A stretch of DNA of 64,000 nucleotides, taken from NCBI GenBank assembly GCA_038087875.1, contig CM075978.1, positions 175,274,001-175,338,000 of the forward strand. The letters are read 5' to 3'. Under the pieces are notes generated by a model. It did not search any database and was not told the origin of the DNA. It saw nothing but the letters and a program-made list of their open reading frames with translations. How positions within the stretch are numbered: position 1 is the stretch's first letter; every line of letters starts with the position of its first letter. The position numbers and the translations under genes are program-made. Shown here in pieces: positions 1-56,153 of this stretch. Source of the DNA: Malacoraja senta (Eukaryota).

Positions 1-718
1 CGAGTTAGGAAATGGATTATCGAGTAATGAAACTGTAAACAATAAAATAATGGTCAGTTGTAATATATTTATAGTGTTAATAATAGGACAGGCTATTATT
101 TCAAACGCATAATTCTGTCTTTGTTTATATCGAGTTGATGTCGACGGGAATAAACACACATGAACATTGCCCATGAACTCAATTGCTGTTTTTTTCATTT
201 TTGTCTCATGCTAGTTGTGTGTAAATAACATAATCAAAGAATCATCTAGGTGCAGAAGAACCAAATATTTTCCTGCAACCAATTCTAAACAGTATATAAG
301 TATGTAGCTTGGATATGTCGCAGAGCATAACAAGTAGTGATTTATAGCTGTGTCGGTACAACAAGTTTGTGGAATGTCCACGAATGGGAAGGGATAAAAA
401 GTTATATACTCTTCACCTTGTGATTCAACAGTGTGGCTGGAAAAAAATCTCCACCGTCATTGCGTTTTTTGGCGACCCTGGTGTGCTCGAGGCAGAATTA
501 CAGACGATGCAGTATTCGTGGAATATTGGGAATGTAATTAAGGAAGTTGAATTTTGCTGTGAAATCCGATCCCAAATCGAATAGAGGCTTTTAAATTAAT
601 TCCAAGAGAGTGGTAGGAAAATCGAAGGTAGATTTCGCTCGCTGCGACTGAACAGTGGAAATACCATTAGTGACAAATGAGGTGCTGTACAACACAGAAA
701 CACATAATCCTTTGTTTT

Positions 719-885
719 TTAAATCCAGAGTATCGATGGAAAACCGATTTTTTTGGAACCGTTCATTCTAATGATGTGCATGACCTCGTAGTCTACTTCC
801 AAAGGCGAATTGACGTCCGCAGTATTCAGGGTGGCACGGCGACTATCGAAAATCCATAGAGAACACAGACGAAAATGCTCCTTTC
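719..885 (-). CDS. Candidate downstream (cytoplasmic) exon
   Basis: Acceptor ttgatattctacag|. The phase-1 frame is open for 54 codons and includes EVDYEVM; no donor upstream could be linked to it with confidence. Confidence 0.2.
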
Positions 886-1530
886 CTGTAGAATATCAAT
901 GAGCTACCTGGAGGGGTTAGGCATGGCAGCAGATTCACGCTCTCTCCCTCAAACACAAGAAGCATTCCCTGAATGATTTTATTGATTTGCGGTAACGAAT
1001 CGATTAAATTTGTCAAGAGTCCTATTAACAGAGCTTTAGTGAAAGGACGCGCACATATCAATTTCTGACCTGTCTCGTAATCTTACTTCAAATGCATCAA
1101 ATGACAACTTACATGGGTCAGCTTTTATGTTTGGTTACAAGTTTTGTAAGAACCATAAACTGATTACTGCACAGGATCTTATTCCACCCACGCTTTCCAA
1201 TCCGATAATTGAAGAGCAACATCCTATATCCAGCTTGTTCTCTGTAAAACTCTCTTCGTTGCTTTCCTTCGTATGCCTTCTTGAAAGTTTGTTTATTGAT
1301 TAGTTGACTGGTTTCATTCTATGAGCGACAGCATTAATAACCAACATTTTGATTGAAGCTTTGTCGAATCTTTTTTATTCAAAACTCTTCATTGACGTCA
1401 GCTACTGCAATCATTCCTCAAAATTTCTTGTTACCTCTTTACAAAAGAAGTCTATCCAATATTTAGACAAACGCGAATTAATGTTATAACTTTTATAAGA
1501 AGAAAGTACAAATGCTGGATAAAACCGAAT

Positions 1531-1700
1531 AGACACAAAAAAACGCTAGTAACTCAGCGGAACAGGCAGCATCTCTGGAGGGAAGGAATGGGTGACGTTT
1601 CGGGTCGGGTCTGAAGAAAGGTCTCGACCCGAAACGTCACCCATTCCTTCGCTCCAGAGATGCTGCCTGTCCCGATGAGTTACTCCAGCTTTTTGTGTAT
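1531..1700. mobile_element. Palindromic (head-to-head) pair of Penelope-like terminal repeats with a hammerhead motif
   Basis: Arms 1531-1607 and 1625-1700 are reverse complements (about 90% identical) around a 17-nt loop. CTGAAGAAAGGTCTCGACCCGAAACGTC lies at 1611-1638. Confidence 0.8.
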
Positions 1701-2103
1701 ATCTTTAATTTTATAACTTGGTTGTTAGATTTTCTCCATTATGTACAAGTGTTTCCAATGTACAAGCAATGTTCATTATTCGGGCATGAAACAGCGTGTC
1801 CTCAAAATATTTTCAAAAATTCTGGCATTGATTTTCTAAAGCAGTTATTTTCTTAAATTATAACAATGGCAGATCAGGAAACGATGACAAAATGTTCAAA
1901 TGTCTCAGAGAATCAATTAAATTGAAACCATTTGATAGATTCGTTTACGCGTGGGAGGAACCTGCCATCTTTTTGCAAAGTACATTGGAATTCATTGCAA
2001 ATTGAATTCTAACAAATACTGTCAGTGATCTTGGAATTGCGTACCGTGATTCATTTAAAAAATGTCAATTATAACCAATGGTGCGAAATCTGCAAGCTTG
2101 GGA

Positions 2104-2243
2104 TTAAGGCTCGATGCAAAAAGTAAAATATGGAGAGGATAAAGGATCAAGAATAATGGCAATTAAGAGAAGGACACACAGCAGTACTTTGTGAAATGGT
2201 GTCTTCCATAGGTGAGGCCATATGAAGAAAGTAGAAGTGCCAT
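2104..2243 (-). CDS. Candidate transmembrane/terminal exon of the VJ-C1 gene
   Basis: After aaaacag| the phase-1 frame reads DGTSTFFIWPHLWKTPFHKVLLCVLLLIAIILDPLSSPYFTFCIEP*. The phase matches the C1 exon, but the acceptor is pyrimidine-poor and the hydrophobic core is only about 13 aa. Confidence 0.35.
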
Positions 2244-2807
2244 CTGTTTTATGTCTGTCCTATTTTATCTTACAAAAAATCAACACCGTGTTTAATTGAA
2301 TTAAACGCCATTTGTCATTCCTCAGCCCATTCGTCGACTTGACCAAGATCCCGTTGTAACTTTTGATAAATCTCTTCACAGTCCACTAAACCACCATTGT
2401 TTGTGCTATCCACAAACTACCCTTGCACGCACATCCAAATCGTTAATGTAAAAGAAAACAGACAGTGAACCCATCCCCGATCCCTGTGGCATACCACTCG
2501 TCAGAGACATTTAGTCATAAAATCCATCCTCTACCATCACTATCTTTAAGGCAATTTCCCATTTTCAAGGCAATTCCGTATCCAATTGGCTAGCTCGCCC
2601 TGGATCAAATACGAACTAACCCTTCAGAGTAGTCAACCAGAATCTTATCAAATGCCATGCTAAGGTAGGCACTACACCGCACTGTCCTCGTCAATGTTCA
2701 TGGTCACCGCTTCAAACCCCGTATTCAAATTCGTAAGACGCGAATTCACACGCACGAAGAAAATCTGACTATCCCCGGTCAGTCCACGCCTCTCCAAATG
2801 CATAGAT

Positions 2808-2990
2808 AGATACACAATGCTGGAGCAACTCAGCGGGATAGGCAGCATCTCTGGATAGAAGGAATGTATGACGTTTCGGGTCGAGATCCTTTTCCGGACT
2901 GAAGAATGGTCTCGACCCGAAACGTAACGCATTCCTTCTATCCAGAGATGCTGTCTGTCCAGCTGAGTTACTCCAGCATTTTGTGTCTCT
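2808..2990. mobile_element. Palindromic pair of Penelope-like terminal repeats with a hammerhead motif
   Basis: Same inverted layout as 1531-1700. CTGAAGAATGGTCTCGACCCGAAACGTA lies at 2899-2926. Confidence 0.8.
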
Positions 2991-3446
2991 CTTCGGTGTA
3001 AACCAGCATGTGCAATTCCTTTCTACACACCTCCCCAAATACATGCAGACCCGGTCTCTCGGAATGTGTAAATCCAATTACTCCAGATCTTACCTTAGCG
3101 TGGAGTTTTGGCACGAAAATATACTTTCATAATCAATCGATTGCCAGCGAAAATCTTCGCAGTATATTTGAGGCATCAGTTTGTTTCGTTCGTGATGATC
3201 TGGTGCTTAATTTATGGTTTAACCCGGACCATAATGCATAATGCATGATGGAACAGGTTGTAATAACGTTCATGAGACACACACAAGTATGGACGTTTGT
3301 CCTAACATCGCCCATTGTTGTGGTACACAACATGTCAACGGTTATACATGTGCTAAACGGACAATATAGTTTATTAACCACACATTTTCCTAAGGTAATC
3401 ATGCGTATGTGGCCAAATTGCATCGAAAATGTATCGTTATTCTTAC

Positions 3447-3749
3447 CTCGACTGTAGAAAGTATAACTGATATTGGTTGGATTCGGAAGAGAAATATGAG
3501 ATACCTGGCAGGTATAAACTGTCCCGCTCTCCACATGGCCTGTCTCGGTCAGGCAGCTCCAAGCTTCGTACAGTCCTGCTGTTGTCTGCGTTTTGTTTGG
3601 CTCAATCGTTTGTATAATATCTGACCCATTTTTGTACCAAGTAATATTCAGATCAAGAGGAAAGAACGTTGCTGTTTTACAAACGAGAATCAGAGTAACC
3701 GATGTGTTCTCCGGCAACATGGTGGTCAATCTCAGAGGAGTTGGGCGGT
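3447..3749 (-). CDS. Ig C1-set exon of the same gene
   Basis: 303-nt open exon reading (D)RPTPLRL..TLILVCKTATFFPLDLNITWYKNG..VYTCQVSHISLPNPTNISYTFYSR, with the C1 hallmarks C-x4-F-F-P, W and Y-x-C-x-V-x-H. Acceptor ttttattttccag| at 3750, donor G|gtaaga at 3446; phase 1-1, in frame with the V exon. Confidence 0.93.
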
Positions 3750-4717
3750 CTGGAAAATAAAACGATTTTTTTATTTCACCATTCCCGTAATTTTCGTGAC
3801 GAATCAAATTCCATTGCAACCTCGAAAAAAATCTTAATTGAACTATATTTGTTTACAGCCTAGTTTTATAACCAATGCACTTACAGTGATTTCAAACGGT
3901 TAAGTGTTTTCCTTGTTGTGGTATTATCTAACGACTAATTTCCTTCCTTTTAAATCTCATCGTCGTATGCCTTGATTTTACAATTGCGGTCTATTGTCCA
4001 ACAGTTACCTTACTTCATAAATATATCGTTTCCGTTTCTACTCGCAGCGCATGTAAATGATGCGTTCCGCTCTGTGCAGAGACATTAGGAGCCAAAGCAA
4101 TAACTTGATTTTTTTTTTAATCGTCTTCGCGATTTTGATTATAATTTTGTGTTAATTGTACAAAATGTAATCCATAATAACAGCTCGACTATCAAAATTT
4201 AACAAATATATTCTTTCTCGTTGTTCAAATAACTAACTCGGGCAGCAGATTTATTCAGAAGTAACTTGAGGTTTAAAAAAAAGCTTTAATTTTCATGGTC
4301 AGAAGAAAGTGTGTGCTTGTGTGAAAACATATTGTACATCTGGACCAGAGGGAACAGCTAGCTATTTAGAGTTCAATTAAGCACAGAAGAGAGTATTGCA
4401 TTACTTCGAGAACAATTATCCCAGCACCATCACATTGTCTTAAGAATTTTGGATGGTATGTAAAGGCCTCTGAGACGTTATCAATGACATTCATACATGA
4501 AAATGTCACTACCCCGTTCCATTTACAATAGCTCAAACAGTGATCAGCGTCTGCGTAAGCCACCCAAAATGTAGGCTTGAGATTCAAACTACAAGTACAT
4601 TTGCACCATTTAAAAACAAACCGTTTTCAATATCTATATGATCTTAATTCTATTTCCATTGCTGCTATCGCTATAACCATAAGTGGAAAGTTAACGGAAA
4701 ATATATGTTTATGTAAC

Positions 4718-4863
4718 AATGTGTAGGAAGGAACTAGAGATGCTGGTTTAAGCCGAAGGTAGATAAAATGCGGTAGTATTTTATCTACCTTCCGAGCGGG
4801 TCAGACAGCATCTCTGGATAAAATGATTAGTTGACGTTTCGGGTCGAGACCCTTCTTCAGACT
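4718..4863 (-). mobile_element. Penelope-like terminal repeat with an intact hammerhead core
   Basis: The reverse complement of 4833-4860 is CTGAAGAAGGGTCTCGACCCGAAACGTC, followed by the usual ..ccagagatgctg.. tail. Confidence 0.75.
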
Positions 4864-4984
4864 AAATGTAACAATACGGATATTTATCCCTCAATGATTG
4901 ACTAGCTTCACGGCTCCTAAATAATTTCAAGTAGCATCCGGGACAATCAGAAATGTGACGAAACTTATACTACGGATTAACATG

Positions 4985-5468
4985 GTACCAATTGAGCAAG
5001 TGCAAAAGAAGTTCTCCAGAATGTTGACTGAAATAGAGGGGCCTAGTTGTATCGAGACACAGATGATGAGTAAAAAACGAGACATTTGGTGAACTTGGTT
5101 TATTCTCAGTAGAACATCGGAGGCAGAGGAGTAACCTTGTAAAAGGTTATTTTTTAAATATCGTGGCCACACAGACGGAGTTTTTTCCCCCCAGAATAGT
5201 GGAATCACGCACTATGAGGCACGGTTTTTAGGTAAAAGTGGAAAATGTAAAAGAGGAAGGTTTGCACACCTGGAACATCTGCCACCGGAGAGGGTGCAGT
5301 ACAATATTAACATTTAAATTGCGTTAGACCCGTCATTACGCAGAAGAATTATAGAGGGATATGGGCCTAATGCAGGCAAACAGCATCAACATATACAAGT
5401 TGCACGGTCGGCAGAGACGACGTGGGCAGAACGGGCCAGTTGTTGTGTTGAATGATTCTATGATTCTG
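4985..5468 (+). mobile_element. Old CR1 LINE 3' fragment
   Basis: Degenerate similarity to the 3' end of CR1 RT and its UTR; ends in a gattctatgattct tail. Confidence 0.65.
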
Positions 5469-5845
5469 TAATTCCTTACAATTTAGATAAAAGAAGATGA
5501 CAGGTCCAAAGAAATCAATTAAAAAATCTCCTTGATCAGTACCACATTCGGAACCCTACATACTTTCACTCTCAACTACCTGTGCCGTGTGTCGATGGTT
5601 TCTGTAACTCCATTCCCTCTGCGTTGAAGCAATTCTAAAATATAAGCGAAAGGTGTTTTAATTCTGTCAAGCAGAAGATGTGGAAGGCGTCATTTACTCT
5701 CACAATCAGTCTATTCGGATTCGTTGGTAATTGCGTCAAAAATACTATCTAACCCATCACACAAATCATATTATTTCAAAGCACACAGATGATGAAGAAA
5801 GCGCAATTTCTTCAACGTGATTGAGTTAATCGCTTTGAGTTGGTG

Positions 5846-6143
5846 AATAGACAATAGACAATAAGCCCTTTGAGCAGCACCGCCATTCCATGTGATCATG
5901 GCTGACCATCTCCAATCAATACCCCGTTCCTGCCTTCTCCCCATATCCCCTGACTCTGCTATCTTTAAGATCCCTATTTTGCTCTCTCTTGAAAGTATCC
6001 AGAGAACCGGCCTCCACCACCCTCTGAGGCACAGAATTCCAGACTCACAACTCTCTGTGTGAAAAAGTATTTCCTCGTCTCCGTTCTAAATGGCTTTCCC
6101 CTTATTCTTAAACTGTGGCCCCTGGTTCTGGACTCCCCCCAAC
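5846..6143 (-). mobile_element. CR1 LINE 3' end in the V-C1 intron
   Basis: Reverse complement of the CR1 3' UTR with an (aatagac)n tail; matches 9820-10098. Confidence 0.85.
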
Positions 6144-6188
6144 AGTTGAAGTTGACCGATCTGGCTCACTCCTCTCCCCGAAACTCAC

Positions 6189-6500
6189 CGTAAACTACCA
6201 GCTTTGTACCAGTCCCGTTTAAAACGTTGGTACGTGTCAAGCTGCAAAAATAGAGCCCGGCGTCCTTCGCTCTCACGTCCTCCAGCCGTAAGACAGCGCT
6301 TCCCCCTCTCAGGAAATAAAACTGGATTCTTTTATCTGCACTCTCATCCAGGAATCTATTATCCCCATCTCTCCACCAATGCACTTTGTACGGCCTGTTG
6401 TCTGAGAAGATTGGATAAATGCAGTAAAGCACTGCCGAGTCACCCCGCATCAAAACAGCTTCTGGAACATGTGTTACGGTCAACGGGCCATCGTCACCAG
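6189..6500 (-). CDS. Ig V-set exon, germline-joined VJ type (non-rearranging receptor; NKp30/SIRP/VJ-C1-like)
   Basis: 312-nt open exon reading ..GDDGPLTVTHVPEAVLMRGDSAVLYC..VHWWRDG..LRLEDVRAKDAGLYFCSLTRTNVLNGTGTKLVVY. It has the B-strand Cys, C-strand Trp, D-x-G-x-Y-x-C and a J-like GxGTxLxV motif. Acceptor tttttcgtttcccgacag| at 6501, donor G|gtgagt at 6188; phase 1-1. Confidence 0.93.
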
Positions 6501-7577
6501 CTGTCGGGAAACGAAAAATCAAATTTAGGACTAAACTGAGGTATTGACCAAATTAATTGAAAATTGCACGAAAGGAGAATAAAAATAAAGATAAAGGATC
6601 AGCAAACTTATAAATTGATAATTAAGTTTCGGTCGGACTGTCTATAGTAAGAGTAAAATATACCGGCGCAGCTGACGTGAAGAACAATCAATTGCAGTAA
6701 GACACGTGTCATCACTCACGGCAAAACTGCATAGAACAGTCGAATGAAACAAGTGTCGAATAAATAGTGAGAGAGAAACACCGCGAGTATGCTTGGGTTC
6801 AGTGGGTGTGCCGGAAAGTGAATCTGCTCATGCTCATCTCATGCATGAGATGCCTCTCTGCGCATTGACGCGGATCAAAGGTGAAGTTAGTGGCTGCTCA
6901 CACATTTCCGAAAACTTCACAAAGCATTTGCTGAACAACTACAGAAATTCAATGCAGCTAAAAATTGCTGCCATTGCGCTTTTGCCCATGCTCTCTATTA
7001 AGCAATGTCCTCGTACTGATCGTCCCGAATATGCTGTCCACGGTCGACCTATGTGAAAATACAGTGACGTTTCGCAGATGCGCCCTGCTTTGATTGCGCC
7101 AATACTTTCCATTCAACACGCCATGATGCGAAGCAATTAATCAGCAAGTAAATGGAGCCGTTCCAGATACCATTCAGCCCCCTCCTCCACTCCATGCCCA
7201 GCCTTCGCTACAGTTTATTGCCGTATGACATGCAATGCGCCAGAGGGCCACACTGCTGAGTTCATTGGCGAATTGAAAGGGTCATTCGTGATTGGCGAGC
7301 GGCTCACATCATGGTCAAAACTGGCAATTAATCGAGGATGTACATAAGAGAGTATTTCTCTGTCATCCAAACAGACCTCAGATCGGCAAGATTTACAGCT
7401 CTGCGATCGTCCGCGTCCATCCGAGCTGAGGCAGGAGTGGGGTGTCAACCATAAATTCGCCTGGATGATGGGACCAATTTGACGCCATCCCTATTGTTAC
7501 AGAATTTTAAAAAAAAAAGATCGCTTTCGATTTGGGAACAACGGCAGGAATCAAAAGAACAAGAAAGAAAACTGAAG

Positions 7578-8104: not shown

Positions 8105-10098
8105 AAAGGTATAAAAATTAAAGCGAAGAACTACAACGTAGCAAAGATGAGCGGGAAGCAAGAGGATAGGGTAATGTTTAAAGAACAACAGAAGATAACC
8201 AAAAAGACAATACGGGGAGAAAAGATGAGGTACGAAGGTAAGCTAGCCAGGAATATAAAGTGGGACAGTAAAAGCTTCTTTAGGTATGTGAAGGGCAAAA
8301 AATTAGTTAAGACCAAAGTTGGACCCTTGAAAAACGAAAAAGGTGAATTCATTATGGGGAACAATGAAATGGCAGATGAGTCGAACAGGTACTTTGGATC
8401 TGTCTTCACTAAGGAGGACACAAACAATCTTCCTGATATAGTAGTGGCCAGAGGATCTGGGTGACAGAGGAACTGAAGGAAATCCACATTAGGCAGGAAA
8501 TGGTGTTGAATAGACTGATGGGACTGAAGGCTGATAAATCCCCAGGGCCCGATGGTCTGCATCCCAGGGTACTTAAGGAAGTGGCTCTAGAAATCGTGGA
8601 TGCATTGGTGATTATGTTCCAATGTTCTATAGACTGAGGATCAGTTCCTGTGGATTGGAGGGTAGCTAATGTTATCCCACTTTTTAAGAAAGGCAGGAGA
8701 GAGAAAACGGGGAATTATAGACCAGTTAGCCTGACATCGGTGGTGGGGAAGATGCTGGAGTCAATTATAAAAGATGAGATAGCCGCACATTTGGATAGCA
8801 GTAACAGGATCGGTCCGAGTCAGCATGGATTTACGAAGGGGAAATCATGCTTGACTAATCTTCTGGAATTTTTTGCAGATGTAACTAGGAAAATGTACAA
8901 GGGAGAGCCAGTGGATGTAGTGTACCTGGACTTTCAGAAAGCATTTGATAAGGTCCCACATAGGAGATTAGTGGGCAAAATTAGGGCACATGGTATTGAG
9001 GGTAGAGTGCTGACATGGATAGAGAAGTGGTTGGCAGACAGGAAACAAAGAGTAGGGATTAATGGGTCCCTTTCAGAATGGCAGGCAGTGACTAGTGGGG
9101 TACCGCAAGGCTCGGTGCTGGGACCGCAGCTATTTACAATATACATCAATGATTTGGATGAAGGGATTCAAAGTAGCATTAGCAAATTTGCAGATGACAC
9201 AAAGCTGGGTGGCAGTGTGAACTGTGAGGAGGATGCTATGAGAATGCAGGGTAACTTGGACAAGTTGGGGGGAGTGGGCAGATGCATGGCAGATGAAGAT
9301 TAATGCGGATAAATGTGAGGTTATCCACTTTGGTAGCAAAAACAGGAAGGCAGATTACAATCTAAATGGCGTCAAGTTGGGAAAGGGGGAAGTACAACGG
9401 GATCTTGGGGTCCTTGTACATCAGTCTATGAAAGTAAGCATGCAGGTACAGCAGGCAGAGAAGAAAGCGAATGGCATGTTGCCCTTTATAACAAGAGGAA
9501 TCGAATATAGGAGCAAAGAGGTCCTTCTGCAGTTGTACAGAGCCCTAGTGAGACCACACCTGGAGTATTGTGTGCAGTTTTGGTCCACTAATTTGAGGAA
9601 GGACATTCTTGCTATTGAGGGAGTGCAGCGTAGGTTTACAAGGTTAATTCCAGGGATGACGGGACTGTCATATGCTGAGAGAATGGAGCAGCTGGGCTTG
9701 TACACTCTGGAGTTTAGAAGGATGAGATGGAATCTTATTGAAACATATAAGATTGTTAAGGGTTTGGACACGCTGGAGGCAGGAAACATGTTCCCGATGT
9801 TGGGGGGAGTCCAGAACCAGGGGGCCACAGTTTAAGAATAAGGAGTAAGCCATTTAGAACGGAGACGAGGAAACACTTTTTTCTCACAGAGAGTGGTGAG
9901 TATGTGGAATTCTCTGCCTCAGAGGGCGGTGGAGGCAGGTTCTCTGGATGCCTTCAAGAGAGAGCTAGATAGGTCTCTTAACAATTGCGGTGTCAGGGGA
10001 TATGGGGAAAAGGCAGGAACGGGGTACTGATTTGGGATGATCAGCCATGATCACATTGAATGGTGGTGCTGGCTCGAAGGGCCAAATGGCCTACTCCT
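8105..10098 (+). mobile_element. 5'-truncated CR1/L3 LINE (ORF2 RT pseudogene)
   Basis: ORF pieces 8147-8464, 8650-9303 and 9293-9835 with GNYRPVSLTS, YLDFQKAFDKVPH, GVPQGSVLGP, KFADDTK and RPHLEYCVQFW; interrupted by stops and frameshifts; 3' tail (ctattgt)n. Confidence 0.95.
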
Positions 10099-17931: not shown

Positions 17932-18098
17932 NNNNNNNNNNNNNNNNNNNNNNNNNNNNNNNNNNNNNNNNNNNNNNNNNNNNNNNNNNNNNNNNNNNNN
18001 NNNNNNNNNNNNNNNNNNNNNNNNNNNNNNNNNNNNNNNNNNNNNNNNNNNNNNNNNNNNNNNNNNNNNNNNNNNNNNNNNNNNNNNNNNNNNNNNNN
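17932..18098. other. Assembly gap (167 N)
   Basis: Run of N. Confidence 1.
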
Positions 18099-36382: not shown

Positions 36383-37690
36383 TCAAGTCAAGTCAAGTCA
36401 AGTTTTTTCGTCACATACACGGACGTGATGTGCAGTGAAATGAAAAGTGGCGATGCTCGCGAATTGTGCAAAAAAAAACAAACAAACAACCAAACAAACT
36501 ACAAACAGAATGGAACAGAATCACATATTCTTTTACATATTAAATATTGTGGGCGAAGGAAAAAGGGGAAAAAAACAGCAATTTAAAAAAAACAGTAGAA
36601 TGGTACAGTAAAATTAGTCCCTGGTGAGATAGGAGTTTACTGTCCTATTGGCCTCTGGGAAGAAACTCCTTCTCAACCTCTCCGTTCTCACAGCATGGCA
36701 ACGGAGGCGTTTGCCTGACCGTAGCAGCTGGAACAGTCTGTTGCTGGGGTGGAAGGGGTCTCCCATGATCTTATTGGCTCTGGAGTTGCACCTCCTGATG
36801 TATAGTTCCTGCAGAGGGGCGAGTGTAGTTCCCATAGTGCGTTCGGCCGAACGCACTACTCTCTGCAGAGCCTTCTTGTCCTGGGCAGAGCAATTCCCAA
36901 ACCAGATTGTGATATTTCCGGACAAGATGCTTTCCACAGCCGCTGAGTAGAAGCACTGGAGGATCCTCGGAGACATTCTGCATTTCCTCAATTGCCTGAG
37001 GTGGTAAAGGCACTGCCTTGACTTACTCACCAGTGCTGCAGCGTGTGATGTCCATGTCATATCCTCAGATATGTGGACTCCCAGGTATTTAAAACAGCTC
37101 ACCCTATCCACAGTATCCCCATTTATCCTCAATGGTGTGTATGTCCTTGGATGATGTGCCCTCCTAAAGTCCACGATCAGCTCCTTAGTTCTTTTGATGT
37201 TCAAGAGGAGGCTGTTGTCCTGACACCAGATTGCCAGATCAGCCAACTCCTCCCGGTAGGCCTTCTCATCGTTGTCTGAGATCAGGCCCACCACCACAGT
37301 GTCATCAGCAAACTTGATTATCGAGTTGGAGCTGAACTTAGCCACACAGTCATGTGTGTACAGGGAGTACAATAGGGGGCTGAGGACGCAACCCTGGGGG
37401 GATCCTGTGCTCAGGGTGAGGGACTTTGATGTATTCCCTCCCATCCTGACTACCTGGGGCCTGGCGGTGAGAAAGTCCAGGGCCCAGGCACACATGGGGG
37501 TGTTGAGCCCTAATTCCAGCAGCTTCTCAGCAAGTCTGGTGGGGACTATCGTGTTGAAGGCTGAACTGAAGTCTATGAACAGCATCCTCACATAGCCCCC
37601 CTTCTGGTTGTCACGATGAGAGAGAGTGGTGTGCAAAACCTGGGAGACCGCATCGTCCGTGGATCTGTTCGGATGGTATGCGAATTGCTG
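36383..37690 (-). mobile_element. 5'-truncated Rex1/Babar non-LTR retrotransposon
   Basis: (CTTGA)n 3' tail at 36383-36402; RT frame open from [16 protein letters not shown] to the stop; inserted into an old CR1 tail. Confidence 0.9.
36614..37690 (-). CDS. Reverse transcriptase (C-terminal part of the Rex1/Babar ORF), uninterrupted for about 358 codons
   Basis: [46 protein letters not shown] and FKYLGVHI. Confidence 0.9.
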
Positions 37691-40489: not shown

Positions 40490-42672
40490 GACCTGCATCT
40501 AGCCTGTCCAACCCCATAAGAATTTTGTACGTTTCTATAAGATCCCCTCTCAATCTCCTAAATTCTAGCGAGTTTAAGCCAAGTCTATCCAGTCTTTCTT
40601 CATATGAAAGTCCTGACATCCCAGGAATCAGTCTGGTGAACCTTCTCTGCACTCCCTCTATGGCTATAATGTCCTTCCTCAGATTTGGAGACCAAAACTG
40701 TACGCAATACTCCAGGTGTGGTCTCACCAAGACCCTGTACAACTGCAGTAGAACCTCCCTGCTCCTATACTCAAATCCTCTTGCTATGAAGGCCAACATA
40801 CCATTCGCTTTCTTCACTGCCTACTGCACCTGCATGCCTACTTTCAATGACTGGTGTACCATGACACCCAGGTCTCGCTGCATCTCCCCATTTCCTAATC
40901 GGCCACCATTTAGATAATAGTCTGCCTTCCTGTTTTTACCACCAAAGTGGATAACCTCACATTTATCCACATTATACTGCATCTGCCAAACATTTGCCCA
41001 CTCACCCAGCCTATCCAAGTCACCTTGCAGTCTCCTAGCATCCTCCTCACAGCTAACACTGCCCCCCAGCTTAGTGTCATCCGCAAACTTGGAGATGTTG
41101 CTTTCAAGTCCCTCGTCCAGATCATTAATATAAATTGTAAATAGCTGGGGTCCCAGCACTGAGCCTTGCGGTACCCCACTAGTCACTGCCTGCCATTGTG
41201 AAAAGGACCCGTTTACTCCTACTCTTTGCTTCCTGTTTGCCAGCCAGTTCTCTATCCACATCAATACTGAACCCCCAATACCGTGTGATTTAAGTTTGTA
41301 TCCTAATCTCTTATGTGGTACCTTGTCGAAAGCCTTCTGAAAGTCCAGATACAACACATCCACTGGTTCTCCCCTATCCACTCTACTAGTTACATCCTCG
41401 AAAAATTCTATAAGATTCGTCAGACACGATTTACCTTTCGTAAATCCATGCTGACTTTGTCCAATGATTTCACCACTTTCCAAACGTGCTGCTATCCCAT
41501 CTTTAATAACTGACTCTAGCAGTTTCCCCACTAACTGGTTAGACTAACTGGTCTGTAATTCCCCGTTTGCTCTCTCCCTCCCTTCTTAAAAAGTGGGGTT
41601 ACGTTTGCTACCCTCCAATCCTCAGGAACTACTCCAGAATCTAAAGAGTTTTGAAAAATTATCACTAATGCATCCACTATTTCTGGAGCTACTTCCTTAA
41701 GTACTCTGGGATGCAGCCTATCTGGCCCTGGTGATTTATCGGACTTTAATCCATTCAATTTACCCAACACCACTTCCCGACTAACCTGGATTTCACTCAG
41801 TTCCTCCATCTCCTTTGACCCGCGGCCCCCTGCTATTTCCGGCAGATTATTTATGTCTTCCTTAGTGAAGACGGAACCAAAGTAGTTATTCAATTGGTCC
41901 GCCATATCCTTGTTCCCCATGATCAATTCACCTGTTTATGACTGCAATGGACCTACATTTGTTTTAACTAATCTCTTTCTCTTCACATATCTATAAAAAC
42001 TTTTGCAGTCAGTTTTTATGTTCCCTGCCAGTTTCCTTTCATAATCTATTTTCCCTTTCCTAATTAAGTCCTTTGTCCTCCTCTGCTGGTCTCTGAATTT
42101 CTCCCAGTCCTCTGGTATGCTGCTTTTTCTGGCTAATTTGTACGCATCATCTTTCGCTTTGATACTATCCCTGATTTCCCTTGTTATCCACGGATGCACT
42201 ACCTTCCCTGATTTATTTTTTGCCAAACTGGGATGAACAATTTTTGTAGTTCATCCATGCAGTCTTTAAATGCCTTCCATTGCATATCCACCGTCAACCC
42301 TTTTAGAACTAATTGCCAGTCAATCTTGGCCAATTCACGTCTCATACCCTCAAAGTTACCTTTCTTTAAGTTCAGAACCGTTGTTTCTGAATTAACAATG
42401 TCACTCTCCATCCTAATGAAGAACTCAACCATATTATGGTCACTCTTGCGCAAGGGGGCACGCACAACAAGACTGCTAACTAACCCTTCCTCATTACTCA
42501 ATACCCAGTCTAGAATAGCCTGCTCTCTCGTTGGTTCCTCTACATGTTGGTTTAGATAACTATCCCTCATACATTCCAAGAAATCCTCTTCCTCAGCACC
42601 CCTGCCAATTTGATTCACCAATCTATATGTAGATTGAAGTCACCCATTATAACTGTTTTGCCTTTGTTGCAC
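40490..42672 (-). mobile_element. CR1 ORF2 pseudogene (APE end through RT), truncated at both ends
   Basis: ORFs 42199-42621 (ILDWVLSN..KSDHNMVEF), 41936-42226, 41531-41926 and 40821-41531 (YLDFQKAF, KFADD), plus 40490-40817; no 3' UTR. Confidence 0.95.
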
Positions 42673-44745: not shown

Positions 44746-44945
44746 NNNNNNNNNNNNNNNNNNNNNNNNNNNNNNNNNNNNNNNNNNNNNNNNNNNNNNN
44801 NNNNNNNNNNNNNNNNNNNNNNNNNNNNNNNNNNNNNNNNNNNNNNNNNNNNNNNNNNNNNNNNNNNNNNNNNNNNNNNNNNNNNNNNNNNNNNNNNNNN
44901 NNNNNNNNNNNNNNNNNNNNNNNNNNNNNNNNNNNNNNNNNNNNN
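44746..44945. other. Assembly gap (200 N)
   Basis: Run of N. Confidence 1.
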
Positions 44946-49769: not shown

Positions 49770-50560
49770 ATACAGCATTAAAACAGGTCATTTGGCTCAA
49801 CTTGCCCACGCTGACTAACATGCCCCAACTTTACTAGTCCCACCTGCCTGTGTTTGACTCATATCCCTTTAAACTTGTCCTATTCATGTACATGTCCAAA
49901 TGTTTCTTATCATTGCATTAACACCTACCTCAACTACCTCCACCGGCAGCTTTTCCATACACCCACCACCCTTTGTGTAAAAAAAGTTATTCCTTGGGTT
50001 CTTATTAAATCTTTCCCTCCTCACCTTATACCCATGTCCTCTAGTTCTCGATTCAACTATTCTGGGCATAAGACTCTGTGCATTTACGCTATTTATTCCT
50101 CTCATGATTTTGTACACTTCTATAAGATCATTTCTCATCCTCATGCACTCAAGTTCTAGCCTGCTCAACCTCTCCTTATAAGCTCAGGCACTCGAGTCCT
50201 GGTACAATCCTTGTAGATCTTCTCTGCACCCTTTCCAGTTTGACAACATATTTTCTGTAACATGGTGACCAAAACTGAACACAATACTCGTCATCTGGCC
50301 TCACCAACGCCTTACAGTATATAACTGCAACATGACCTCCCAACTTCTATACTCAATACTCAAGCCCTACCATTTACTGTGTTAGTCCTGCCCATGTTAG
50401 ACTTCCAAATTGCAACACTTCACATTTCTCTGTATGAAATTCCATCAACCATTCCTCAGCCCACGTGCCCAACCTATGAAGATCCTGCTGCAATTTTTGA
50501 CAACCATCTTCACTGACACCCCTTTCATGTCATTTTCAAATTTGTTAATCATGCCATGTA
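49770..50560 (-). mobile_element. Old CR1 fragment spanning the B/C junction (paralogues at 44420-44745 and 45600-45800)
   Basis: MRNDLIEVYKIMRG..FFYTKGGGCMEKLP and MISKFENDAKGSDSEDSCQKLQQDL fragments. Confidence 0.75.
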
Positions 50561-55008: not shown

Positions 55009-56153
55009 CAGGGCCGGCCTTAAGCCGATTTGGACCGATTTCTCCCAATTGGGCCCCACGCCTAGAGTTTTCCAAAGCTCCGCTCTAGGATCTTTGGAGT
55101 AATCTACTCTCGGCTCGGGTAGATCTACCCCGGGTGGAGGGGGGAGAGAGGGGTGGAGAGAGAGCAGAGGGATAGATGGGGAAGAAAGGGATAGATGGGG
55201 AGGGGGTGTGAGGGGGAATGGAGAAGAGGGTGAGGGAGAGGTCCCTCATGGTCCCAGGGCAGTGCTCCCACCCCTCCAGTTGCCGTGCTTCACGCACACA
55301 GCCCCAGCTCCACCCCTCTCCCTCCCCGGGGAGACGCGGTGAACAATACAGGGAGGGCCGGGCCGGGGTTTGGAGCAACGTTTACAAACCTCGGCCTCAG
55401 CTCACGCATTTGCCCGGACCCCGGCATCCGCTCCNNNNNNNNNNNNNNNNNNNNNNNNNNNNNNNNNNNNNNNNNNNNNNNNNNNNNNNNNNNNNNNNNN
55501 NNNNNNNNNNNNNNNNNNNNNNNNNNNNNNNNNNNNNNNNNNNNNNNNNNNNNNNNNNNNNNNNNNNNNNNNTCCTCCCTCCCTTCTTTCTCTACTTCCC
55601 TCACTCCCTTCTCTCCCTCCCTCCCTACTCTCCTTCCCTCCCACACACACTCACATAACGCACAGACAACTAACACACATAACGCACAGACAACTAACAC
55701 ACAAACATCATGCACAGACAACTAACACACACACACGCGAATGGGGTAGAATGGGGCTGAAGCCCCAAATTTAATGCCTGGACTGTTTTTTCGCCGAAAG
55801 TTATTGGTTTGCCAGGATCTAGTTAATTAAATTACTTTTTTTTCATTTCACAGTCACTAAATCAAGTGGTATTGTAACTATGTACTTTTCAGAGGTGATC
55901 TACACATTTTGTTTGTTACTTGTAGGTACATGTATGCAATTTTATATTAAAATGTAGCTTAGATCTGTTTGGTCCATTAACTCGCAGGCACTTTTTAAAA
56001 GCACATTTTGATTACTTTCTATTCTACCATAGAGATATAAAGTCTATAATAGCATTTATTTGTATTTCTATGATTCTACAGACCTTGGCTGGGAACCTGG
56101 GTCTCACCAAAATGGTTCCCAATTGGGCCCCGCACTTCCTAAGGCCGGCCCTG
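55009..56153. mobile_element. hAT-superfamily non-autonomous element (MITE-like)
   Basis: TIRs cagggccggcctta / taaggccggccctg and a perfect 8-bp TSD GTGATGAA at 55001-55008 and 56154-56161; subterminal cccaattgggcccc repeats; spans a gap. Confidence 0.92.
55435..55572. other. Assembly gap (138 N)
   Basis: Run of N. Confidence 1.

What the first reader, a model, noticed from the sequence alone, without database searches (positions are those of the whole stretch)
3447..6500. Non-rearranging, germline-joined VJ + C1 receptor gene with the architecture of an antigen-receptor chain but no RSS
Seen: one exon encodes both the V framework and a J-like G strand (YFC-SLTRTNVL-NGTGTKLVV). It splices in phase 1 to a C1-set exon. 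No heptamer is visible at the V/J seam, and the C strand reads WWRDG rather than the WYQQ of Ig light chains. Established: C1-set domains are largely confined to Ig, TCR, MHC/B2M, tapasin, SIRP and B7-H6-like proteins; single-exon VJ-C1 genes (PRARP/VJC1 families, with NKp30 as the VJ-only relative) are discussed as remnants of the pre-RAG antigen-receptor ancestor. Inference: this may be a lineage-specific chondrichthyan member of that class. It is the strongest biological signal in the window.
Basis: partly seen in the sequence, partly recalled or inferred. Interest (0 to 1): 0.75.

Follow-up and report, generated by a model that had tools for sequence, protein, structure and literature searches.

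The report
Skate non-rearranging V-C1 immune receptor gene
This is a real, apparently intact skate gene for a cell-surface immune receptor whose outer part looks like one antibody chain but never rearranges; it belongs to a large shark, ray and chimaera gene family that is already in public catalogues under a jumble of wrong names, so it is a good but not new kind of gene.

Summary
On the minus strand, a V exon with a fused J-like G strand (6500-6189) joins in phase 1 to a C1-set exon (3749-3447), and there is no RSS. I added a split leader exon (6712-6664) and the start of a stalk/transmembrane exon (32-1, running off the window).

The little skate has a collinear orthologous locus. Its exons are 95-96% identical, its splice sites are conserved and dN/dS is below 1. 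Downstream it carries an uncharged transmembrane exon and a tyrosine-motif exon.

The gene belongs to a large family found here only in cartilaginous fish. Members have a V(J)-C1-TM layout with inhibitory-type tyrosine tails or charged-TM, activating-type variants. NCBI labels them inconsistently (SIRP-alpha-like, Ig lambda-like, tapasin-related-like, NCR3LG1-like). Within the family this gene sits in a conserved orthologue clade from chimaera to skate (support 100/99).

It is not IgL, tapasin, B7-H6, NKp30, UrIg or a canonical SIRP. It most likely works like SIRP-alpha. No RNA evidence for the splice could be obtained.

The scan had already found this family on other DNA of the same genome (s1-140183, s1-140140, s1-141208). 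Note s1-140492 is probably this gene's tail.

The parts
6664..6712 (-). Leader exon: ATG at 6712, 16 codons plus 1 base of a split codon; hydrophobic signal peptide MTRVLLQLIVLHVSCA; donor G|gtatat
   Evidence: Scan for an ATG, a hydrophobic core and a phase-1 donor; joined translation is open; 47 of 49 nt identical, with the same donor, in the little skate
6501..6663 (-). Leader intron, 163 nt (split-leader arrangement)
   Evidence: Bounded by the leader donor and the V acceptor
6189..6500 (-). V exon with fused J-like G strand (NGTGTKLVV); canonical Cys26-Trp41-Cys85; C strand HWWRDG; no RSS
   Evidence: V-set E 5.5e-8; no RSS; AF2 model, pLDDT 80, V-type strands; 95.2% nt identity to the little skate, dN/dS 0.59
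3750..6188 (-). V-C1 intron (2439 nt); holds very high-copy repeats at about 4704-4937 and 5874-6224, and a 303-nt insertion at 5844-6146 that is absent from another copy in public reads
3447..3749 (-). C1-set exon (LNITWYKNGS .. YTCQVSH), five N-glycosylation sequons, phase 1 at both ends
   Evidence: C1-set E 6.1e-12; AF2 pLDDT 89; nearest folds are MHC class II beta2, beta2-microglobulin-type and TAPBPR C1 domains; 95.7% nt identity, dN/dS 0.35
33..3446 (-). C1-TM intron; repeat-rich, with no second Ig exon
   Evidence: tblastn with family proteins finds nothing here; collinear with the little-skate intron
1..32 (-). First 32 nt of the stalk/transmembrane exon (acceptor ..gtttacag|, then V-SLLDNPFPNS); the rest lies beyond the window start
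   Evidence: aligns with the little-skate exon at L001 18322-18434, (V)PLPDNTFHNWIFGCIGAGLIPLIIIIFIVKRK, and with the Amblyraja model P0002

Best explanation
This is an intact, germline-joined (never rearranging) gene of a skate for a type I membrane glycoprotein. Its layout is split leader, one V domain whose G strand carries a J-like NGTGTKLVV motif, one C1-set domain, a short stalk and a transmembrane segment.

It belongs to a large family of V(J)-C1 receptors seen here only in cartilaginous fish. The family comes in inhibitory-type forms (uncharged TM, tails with LxYxxL / TxYxxI-like tyrosine motifs) and activating-type forms (charged TM, short tail).

This gene lies in a slowly evolving orthologue lineage that runs from chimaeras to skates, and all complete members of that lineage are of the inhibitory type. 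The most likely mechanism is as follows: the V domain binds a conserved, probably endogenous, cell-surface ligand; tail tyrosines are then phosphorylated and recruit SH2 phosphatases (SHP-1/2 type), damping the cell. That is how SIRP-alpha works.

Shown: exon structure, domain types, absence of an RSS, orthology, purifying selection, family range, and TM plus tyrosine-motif exons in the little-skate orthologue.

Inferred: expression, the V-C1 splice in this species, the tail of this particular copy, phosphatase recruitment, and the ligand.
For: - Exons, phases and open joined frame.
- Pfam V-set and C1-set. No RSS.
- Orthologous collinear locus in Leucoraja erinacea at 91-94% nt identity, with exons at 95-96%, all splice sites conserved, and dN/dS 0.59 (V) and 0.35 (C1).
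- Downstream in that locus: an uncharged TM exon and an exon carrying AIVYSDF..STIYTQ, with 23 residues between the tyrosines, as in the Heterodontus orthologue.
- Full-length orthologues in Mobula, Heterodontus and Heptranchias are V-C1-TM with tyrosine-motif tails.
- Family size and range: 111 representatives at E<=1e-30. Every family member whose name was looked up is a cartilaginous fish, including Callorhinchus.
- Of the 77 models with a TM, 44 have tyrosine-motif tails and 15 have a charged TM without such a tail.
- Tree: the window gene with the Leucoraja, Mobula, Heterodontus, Heptranchias and Callorhinchus sequences forms a clade at 100/99, with the species-tree topology.
- For a full-length orthologue, the nearest named clusters by protein-language-model features are SIRP-alpha (0.96).
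Against: - No RNA evidence. The only public runs that hold the locus behave as DNA, with flat depth over introns and no 6189/3749 joint.
- The TM and tail of this copy lie outside the window.
- The little-skate tyrosine motifs are not canonical: IVYSDF has F at +3.
- NCBI's models of the two closest orthologues are truncated or read into introns, so those models do not document the correct V-C1-TM splicing pattern in skates.
- The ligand and the expressing cell type are unknown.
Confidence: 0.8

Rival explanations
1. The family is the cartilaginous-fish counterpart (co-orthologue) of the SIRP family proper. This gene would then be a SIRP-alpha homologue that has one C1 domain instead of two.
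For: - The first non-chondrichthyan hits of the family profile are SIRP-type proteins of duck and lungfish.
- The nearest named Atlas clusters for a full-length orthologue are SIRP-alpha.
- The family has paired inhibitory and charged-TM forms, as SIRP-alpha and SIRP-beta do.
- One Amblyraja member (P0014) has a V-C1-C1 layout.
- The alternating LxYxxL.. / TEYAxL.. tails recall the SIRP-alpha tail (this comparison is from memory).
Against: - SIRP V domains score only 14-16 bits against the V profile of this gene's subfamily (alignment A2), where other members of the chondrichthyan family score 40 or more.
- SIRP does not appear among the top V-domain fold or sequence matches.
- The SIRP profile hits owe their score to several summed C1 domains.
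- Synteny with the human 20p13 SIRP cluster was not tested.
Confidence: 0.25
2. It is a relic of the pre-RAG antigen-receptor precursor (PRARP- or UrIg-like), specifically related to Ig/TCR chains.
For: - Single-exon VJ, C1 domain, phase-1 exons and split leader match the layout discussed for such relics.
- The nearest Atlas clusters for the V exon alone are labelled 'putative antigen receptor (fragment)' (0.95).
- The lineage is old, reaching from chimaera to skate.
Against: - V-domain searches do not place it nearer Ig/TCR than NKp30, pIgR, TREM-like or I-set domains.
- The C strand lacks the WYQQ-type interface, reading HWWRDG instead.
- An N-glycosylation sequon sits on the J-like strand.
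- UrIg and UrIg2 have three or more C domains, whereas this gene has one.
- The protein is a TM receptor with a signalling tail, part of a birth-and-death paired-receptor family.
Confidence: 0.1
3. It is an unexpressed or decaying copy (a young pseudogene) in a birth-and-death cluster.
For: - No RNA evidence.
- Public gene models of the skate orthologues are incomplete.
- Near-identical extra copies seem to exist.
- V-exon dN/dS of 0.59 is only moderately constrained.
Against: - All three complete exons are open, the first 32 nt of the TM exon are open too, and all splice sites are consensus-like.
- The same holds in the little skate after about 8% neutral divergence, and exons are more conserved than introns.
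- Orthologues are retained across all cartilaginous-fish lineages.
Confidence: 0.1
4. It is a germline-joined immunoglobulin light-chain gene, as NCBI's label 'Ig lambda-1 light chain-like' for relatives suggests.
For: Cartilaginous fish do have germline-joined IgL genes (established knowledge). The V(J)-intron-C1 layout is the same.
Against: - A stalk/TM exon follows C1 in the window and in the little skate.
- Orthologues have cytoplasmic tyrosine-motif tails.
- No bona fide IgL appeared among the 68 chondrichthyan hits at E<1e-14.
Confidence: 0.01

Closest known systems
SIRP family (SIRP-alpha inhibitory, SIRP-beta activating)
   Same: V domain with a J-like G strand followed by C1-set domain(s), a TM and a tyrosine-motif inhibitory tail. 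Paired inhibitory and charged-TM forms occur within one family. SIRP is the nearest named family for whole-protein features and the first non-chondrichthyan profile hit.
   Different: There is one C1 domain instead of two. The V sequence is not SIRP-like (14-16 bits). The ligand is unknown and orthology is untested.
NKp30 (NCR3)
   Same: A non-rearranging VJ-type V domain. NKp30 gives the highest sequence identity among solved or reviewed V domains aligned over their full length (28-31%), and a single-domain PDB hit at 32 bits.
   Different: NKp30 has no C1 domain and has an activating-type charged TM. Here a C1 exon follows V, and the orthologues' TM is uncharged. The E-values do not single NKp30 out.
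PRARP genes of bony vertebrates (Fu et al. 2019, cited in PMC10751288)
   Same: A non-rearranging VJ plus C1 membrane protein, cited as a possible relic of the antigen-receptor precursor.
   Different: No bony-vertebrate protein of this layout appeared in the searches.
UrIg / UrIg2 of elasmobranchs (PMC12227049)
   Same: Non-rearranging single-exon VJ, split leader and C1-type domains, all in elasmobranchs.
   Different: By the paper's account, UrIg and UrIg2 carry several C domains (nurse shark UrIg2 has nine) and UrIg2's N-terminal domains form homodimers whose C2-C3 part resembles IgG Fc. This gene has one C1 domain, and its orthologues have an inhibitory-type tail. UrIg2 V is not among the top V matches.
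Germline-joined IgL of cartilaginous fish
   Same: V and J fused in the germline, an intron, then a C1 exon.
   Different: A TM exon and a signalling tail are present, and the WYQQ-type V interface is absent. This is not an Ig chain.

Membership tests
Unnamed chondrichthyan V(J)-C1 paired-receptor family (NCBI: 'PTPNS1/SIRP-like', 'Ig lambda-1-like', 'tapasin-related-like', 'NCR3LG1-like') | Leader, single-exon V with a GxGxxLxV G strand, and one C1-set exon, all in phase 1 | tested here: met
Unnamed chondrichthyan V(J)-C1 paired-receptor family | Groups inside the family in a V+C1 tree, with named orthologues | tested here: met
   Clade with the Leucoraja, Mobula, Heterodontus, Heptranchias and Callorhinchus sequences at 100/99
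Unnamed chondrichthyan V(J)-C1 paired-receptor family | TM segment plus either a tyrosine-motif tail or a charged TM | tested here: inconclusive
   Only 32 nt of the TM exon lie in the window. The little-skate orthologue has an uncharged TM and a tyrosine-motif exon.
SIRP | V-C1-C1 ectodomain | tested here: not met
   One C1 exon only. No second Ig exon lies between C1 and the TM exon.
SIRP | SIRP-type V domain sequence | tested here: not met
   Duck and lungfish SIRP V domains score 13.8-15.5 bits against this subfamily's V profile (A2), where other family members score 40 or more
SIRP | Binds CD47; tail recruits SHP-1/2 | not testable with these tools
   Needs binding and phosphopeptide assays
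NKp30 (NCR3) | Single V domain directly followed by stalk and TM | tested here: not met
   A C1 exon lies at 3749-3447
NKp30 (NCR3) | Charged TM residue for adaptor pairing | tested here: not met
   The TM of the orthologues is uncharged. The window copy's TM is off-window.
PRARP | Orthology to PRARPA/PRARPB of bony vertebrates | not testable with these tools
   The paper and sequences are not held
UrIg / UrIg2 | VJ followed by three or more C domains | tested here: not met
   Single C1 domain; UrIg2 description
Immunoglobulin light chain (germline-joined) | Secreted V-J-C chain without TM | tested here: not met
   A stalk/TM exon follows C1
Tapasin / TAPBPR | Large N-terminal non-Ig domain before the Ig domains; no J-like strand | tested here: not met
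   The V exon follows the leader directly and a J-like strand is present

The most novel reading that the evidence does not exclude
This slowly evolving lineage, with one-to-one orthologues from chimaera to skate, may represent an ancestral VJ-C1 inhibitory receptor. NKp30 (V only) and the SIRPs (V-C1-C1) could both descend from it, or it could be the missing cartilaginous-fish orthologue of the PRARP genes. Either would make it a direct living relative of the non-rearranging precursor of antigen receptors.
Probability: 0.12. Interest if true: 0.65.

Novelty: new member of a known kind. Interest (0 to 1): 0.35.

Why it matters
Non-rearranging VJ-C1 genes are central to current arguments about how antibodies and T-cell receptors arose (UrIg and UrIg2 papers, 2023-2025).

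This family is large, seen here only in cartilaginous fish, and apparently undescribed in the literature I could search. Public annotation hides it under at least ten unrelated names.

Two points may be useful to comparative immunologists. One subfamily, which includes this gene, is conserved one-to-one from chimaeras to skates and so probably has a conserved ligand. The family as a whole is a paired inhibitory/activating system like the SIRPs.

For this particular locus the result is ordinary: one more correctly recognised member, already met elsewhere in this genome by the scan.

Tried and rejected
- **RNA support.** Both run searches returned only DNA-like runs. Laying them gave flat depth over introns and no V-C1 joint, so the splice remains unobserved.
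- **V domain against solved structures.** Sequence and profile searches and Foldseek against PDB and Swiss-Prot models list hundreds of Ig domains at similar scores. They do not discriminate between families.
- **Key papers.** PRARP, shark NKp30/B7H6, the first UrIg paper and the Ohta reviews are not held. Literature searches found no description of this family.
- **Weak tblastn hit at 50135-50410.** Rejected, because every frame has stops.
- **Hydrophobic stretch at 2259-2107 as a candidate TM exon.** Rejected in favour of the conserved exon starting at 32.
- **Four-codon 'MQFC' mini-leader near 6730.** Rejected in favour of the conserved hydrophobic leader at 6712-6664.
- **NCBI's 'turtle SIRP-alpha isoform X2' (P0120).** Not usable as a SIRP reference. 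It has no V-domain match to the A2 profile, its hydrophobic segment lies in mid-chain, and it ends without a cytoplasmic tail.
- **Joined V+C1 protein.** Not sent to remote tools, because it has no single reference. The domains were analysed separately, and joined only inside scripts.
Full report
**What is in the sequence**

The gene lies on the minus strand. The V exon runs from 6500 to 6189 (312 nt). It follows an AG acceptor (..cccgacag|) and ends at G|gtgagt. It encodes a complete V-type domain with the canonical Cys-Trp-Cys triad, a C strand reading HWWRDG, the F strand DAGLYFC, a short CDR3-like loop and a J-like G strand, NGTGTKLVV.

The C1 exon runs from 3749 to 3447 (303 nt), with acceptor ttttccag| and donor G|gtaaga. 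Both exons are phase 1. Joined, they stay open: the split codon G+AC gives Asp.

Pfam calls the first exon V-set (E 5.5e-8, above the curated cut-off) and the second C1-set (E 6.1e-12; C2-set models only reach 0.04-0.07). No recombination-signal heptamer lies in the exon or at the V/J seam. The single one-mismatch heptamer, at 6117, is inside an intronic repeat and has no nonamer.

A scan for an ATG, a hydrophobic core and a phase-1 donor upstream of the V exon gave one outstanding candidate. It is 6712-6664, MTRVLLQLIVLHVSCA plus one base, with donor G|gtatat. It joins the V exon in frame through a 163-nt intron, which is the classical split leader.

At the other end, the last 32 bases of the window (32-1) follow a ..gtttacag acceptor. 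They continue the C1 exon's phase as V-SLLDNPFPNS. This matches the stalk that precedes the transmembrane segment in the Amblyraja model P0002. The gene therefore runs off the window start. The scan's note s1-140492 covers 5.6 kb ending at position 32 and calls itself a minus-strand receptor gene. It is most likely this gene's TM and tail; I could not read that DNA.

tblastn with family proteins finds no other V or C1 exon in the 64 kb. The rest of the window is largely LINE reverse-transcriptase debris.

**Is it a real, constrained gene?**

The closest public protein, P0001 of Leucoraja erinacea, led to its locus, L001. That locus is collinear with the window over leader, V, C1, introns and flanks, at 91-94% nucleotide identity. 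It is therefore the orthologous locus of a closely related skate.

- The three exons are 95-96% identical, against about 91% for the surrounding non-coding DNA.
- Every splice site is conserved.
- dN/dS is 0.59 for V and 0.35 for C1.

Downstream, the little-skate locus has three further exons:
- a stalk/TM exon, (V)PLPDNTFHNWIFGCIGAGLIPLIIIIFIVKRK, uncharged, which starts exactly where window position 32 aligns;
- a small basic exon;
- an exon encoding ..AIVYSDF..(23 residues tyrosine to tyrosine)..STIYTQ.

The Heterodontus orthologue has the same 23-residue spacing between IVYATADF and AVYAQL.

NCBI's skate models miss these exons. P0001 starts at an internal Met and reads into the C1 intron. 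P0002 reads into the intron after the basic exon.

**The family**

A profile of the orthologues searched against 1.8 billion representatives gave 111 proteins at E<=1e-30. Dozens of them are 200-400-residue proteins matched end to end.

Every family member whose name I looked up comes from a shark, ray, skate or chimaera. A second profile search with names gave 68 hits below 1e-14, all chondrichthyan. The next hits were turtle MHC class II beta chains at about 4e-9, matching on C1 only.

The automatic names are a jumble:
- SIRP-alpha-like or SIRP-beta-like;
- Ig lambda-1 light chain-like;
- tapasin-related-like;
- NCR3LG1-like;
- PD-L1-like;
- MHC class I-like or class II-like;
- TCR beta-like;
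- FcRn-like.

Family members of one species share a chromosome-scale contig. In the little skate, P0067 is on the same chromosome as P0001.

Of the 77 models with a recognisable TM:
- 44 have tails with [ILVST]xYxx[ILVF] motifs, typically LTYAxL followed by TEYAxL/I;
- 15 have a charged residue in the TM and no such tail;
- 18 have neither.

This is a paired inhibitory/activating receptor family.

**Place of this gene in the family**

I built a V+C1 maximum-likelihood tree (56 rows, LG+C20, rooted on a lungfish SIRP-like protein). The window gene pairs with the little-skate protein (100/99), then with Mobula (100/98), then with Heterodontus plus Heptranchias (98/92), then with Callorhinchus P0011 (100/99). 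The order follows the species tree and the branches are short.

This is therefore a conserved orthologue lineage, not one of the fast-duplicating branches. V identity to the shark orthologues is 52-58%, against 25-40% to other family members. All complete members of the lineage have an uncharged TM and tyrosine-motif tails.

**Comparison with known families**

- **IgL.** Excluded by the TM exon.
- **Tapasin and TAPBPR.** Excluded because the V exon follows the leader directly and carries a J-like strand.
- **UrIg and UrIg2.** These have several C domains, and UrIg2's N-terminal domains form homodimers whose C2-C3 part resembles IgG Fc.
- **NKp30.** It has no C1 domain. It does give the highest identity among V domains aligned over their full length (28-31%), but the E-values do not separate it from TCR, pIgR, TREM-like or I-set domains.
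- **SIRP.** SIRP-type proteins (duck SIRP-beta, lungfish SIRP-like) are the first hits outside cartilaginous fish. SIRP-alpha clusters are the nearest named neighbours of a full-length orthologue by language-model features (0.96). However, SIRP V domains score only 14-16 bits against the V profile of this gene's subfamily (alignment A2), and this gene has one C1 domain, not two.
- **PRARP.** Could not be tested, because neither the paper nor the sequences were available.

The C1 model (pLDDT 89) has the strand pattern of a C1-set domain, including a D strand. It is nearest to MHC class II beta2 and related C1 domains. The V model (pLDDT 80) is an ordinary V fold with a confident G strand.

**How it most likely works**

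The protein is a glycosylated type I membrane receptor, with six N-x-S/T sequons in V plus C1. One of these, NGT, lies on the J-like strand itself.

The Gln-rich WYQQ interface of Ig/TCR V domains is replaced by HWWRDG. The sequon sits where Ig/TCR chains have the F/W-G-x-G bulge. I therefore infer that the V domain does not pair like an antibody V domain.

The slow evolution of the lineage argues for a conserved, probably self, ligand. Signalling is inferred to be inhibitory, through phosphorylated tail tyrosines that recruit SHP-type phosphatases, as in SIRP-alpha. For this copy the inference rests on the little-skate orthologue's exons and on the shark and ray orthologues. Its own tail was not seen.

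**Reads**

The only public runs holding the locus (X1, X2; same organism code) show even depth across introns and no spliced joint, so they behave as DNA.

They do reveal a second, nearly identical version of both exons at roughly twice the depth of the flanking introns. It has 5 differences in V (3 change the amino acid) and 11 in C1 (5 change it). All five V variants, and four of the eleven C1 variants, match the little-skate base. This version is linked to an intron that lacks the 303-nt insertion at 5844-6146.

The simplest reading is one or two very recent paralogous copies, or a divergent haplotype. I could not separate the two.

**Verdict**

The gene is not a new kind of thing. The family is already in public catalogues, though misnamed and, as far as I could find, undescribed. 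This scan has reported it on other DNA of the same genome (s1-140183, s1-140140, s1-141208).

Nothing shows a special relation to the antigen-receptor ancestor. The protein is best understood as a SIRP-alpha-like inhibitory receptor with an NKp30-like tip.

Noticed in passing
window 5844-6146: A 303-nt insertion in the V-C1 intron belongs to a very high-copy repeat (word depth 1e5-1e7 in all runs). Contigs in X1 and X2 join 5843 directly to 6147, so another copy or haplotype lacks it.
   Followed up: partly
window 3447-3749 and 6189-6500: Public DNA contigs of the same organism carry a variant of both exons at about twice the intron depth: 11 differences in C1 and 5 in V, 8 of them amino-acid changes. 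Adjacent intron contigs are identical to the window. This suggests near-identical paralogue(s), gene conversion or a divergent haplotype. All five V variants and four of the eleven C1 variants match the little-skate base.
   Followed up: partly
L001 (Leucoraja erinacea CM054023.1, 19.88 Mb) and proteins P0001, P0002: NCBI's models of the skate orthologues are wrong. P0001 lacks the leader exon and reads through the C1 donor into the intron. P0002 starts inside C1 and ends by reading into an intron after a small cytoplasmic exon. The TM and tyrosine-motif exons exist in the DNA but are not modelled together.
   Followed up: yes
window 8650-9303 (+), 36614-37636 (-), 40821-41531 (-): Reverse-transcriptase (RVT_1) fragments of LINE-type retrotransposons (E 3e-30 to 7e-18). 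Most of the window outside the receptor gene looks like repeat debris.
   Followed up: partly
window 4704-4937 and 5874-6224: Two short intronic stretches with enormous summed depth in every run laid, including runs of other organism codes. They are SINE-like elements widespread in related genomes.
   Followed up: no
C1 exon, window about 3545-3560 (AWSCLTE): A third cysteine in the C1 domain is shared by the window gene, the little skate, Mobula and Hypanus, but not by Amblyraja (Y) or the sharks (K/Y/N). It could be a batoid-specific free or inter-chain cysteine.
   Followed up: no
window 17932-18098, 44746-44945, 55435-55572: Three runs of N (assembly gaps or masking); left untouched.
   Followed up: no
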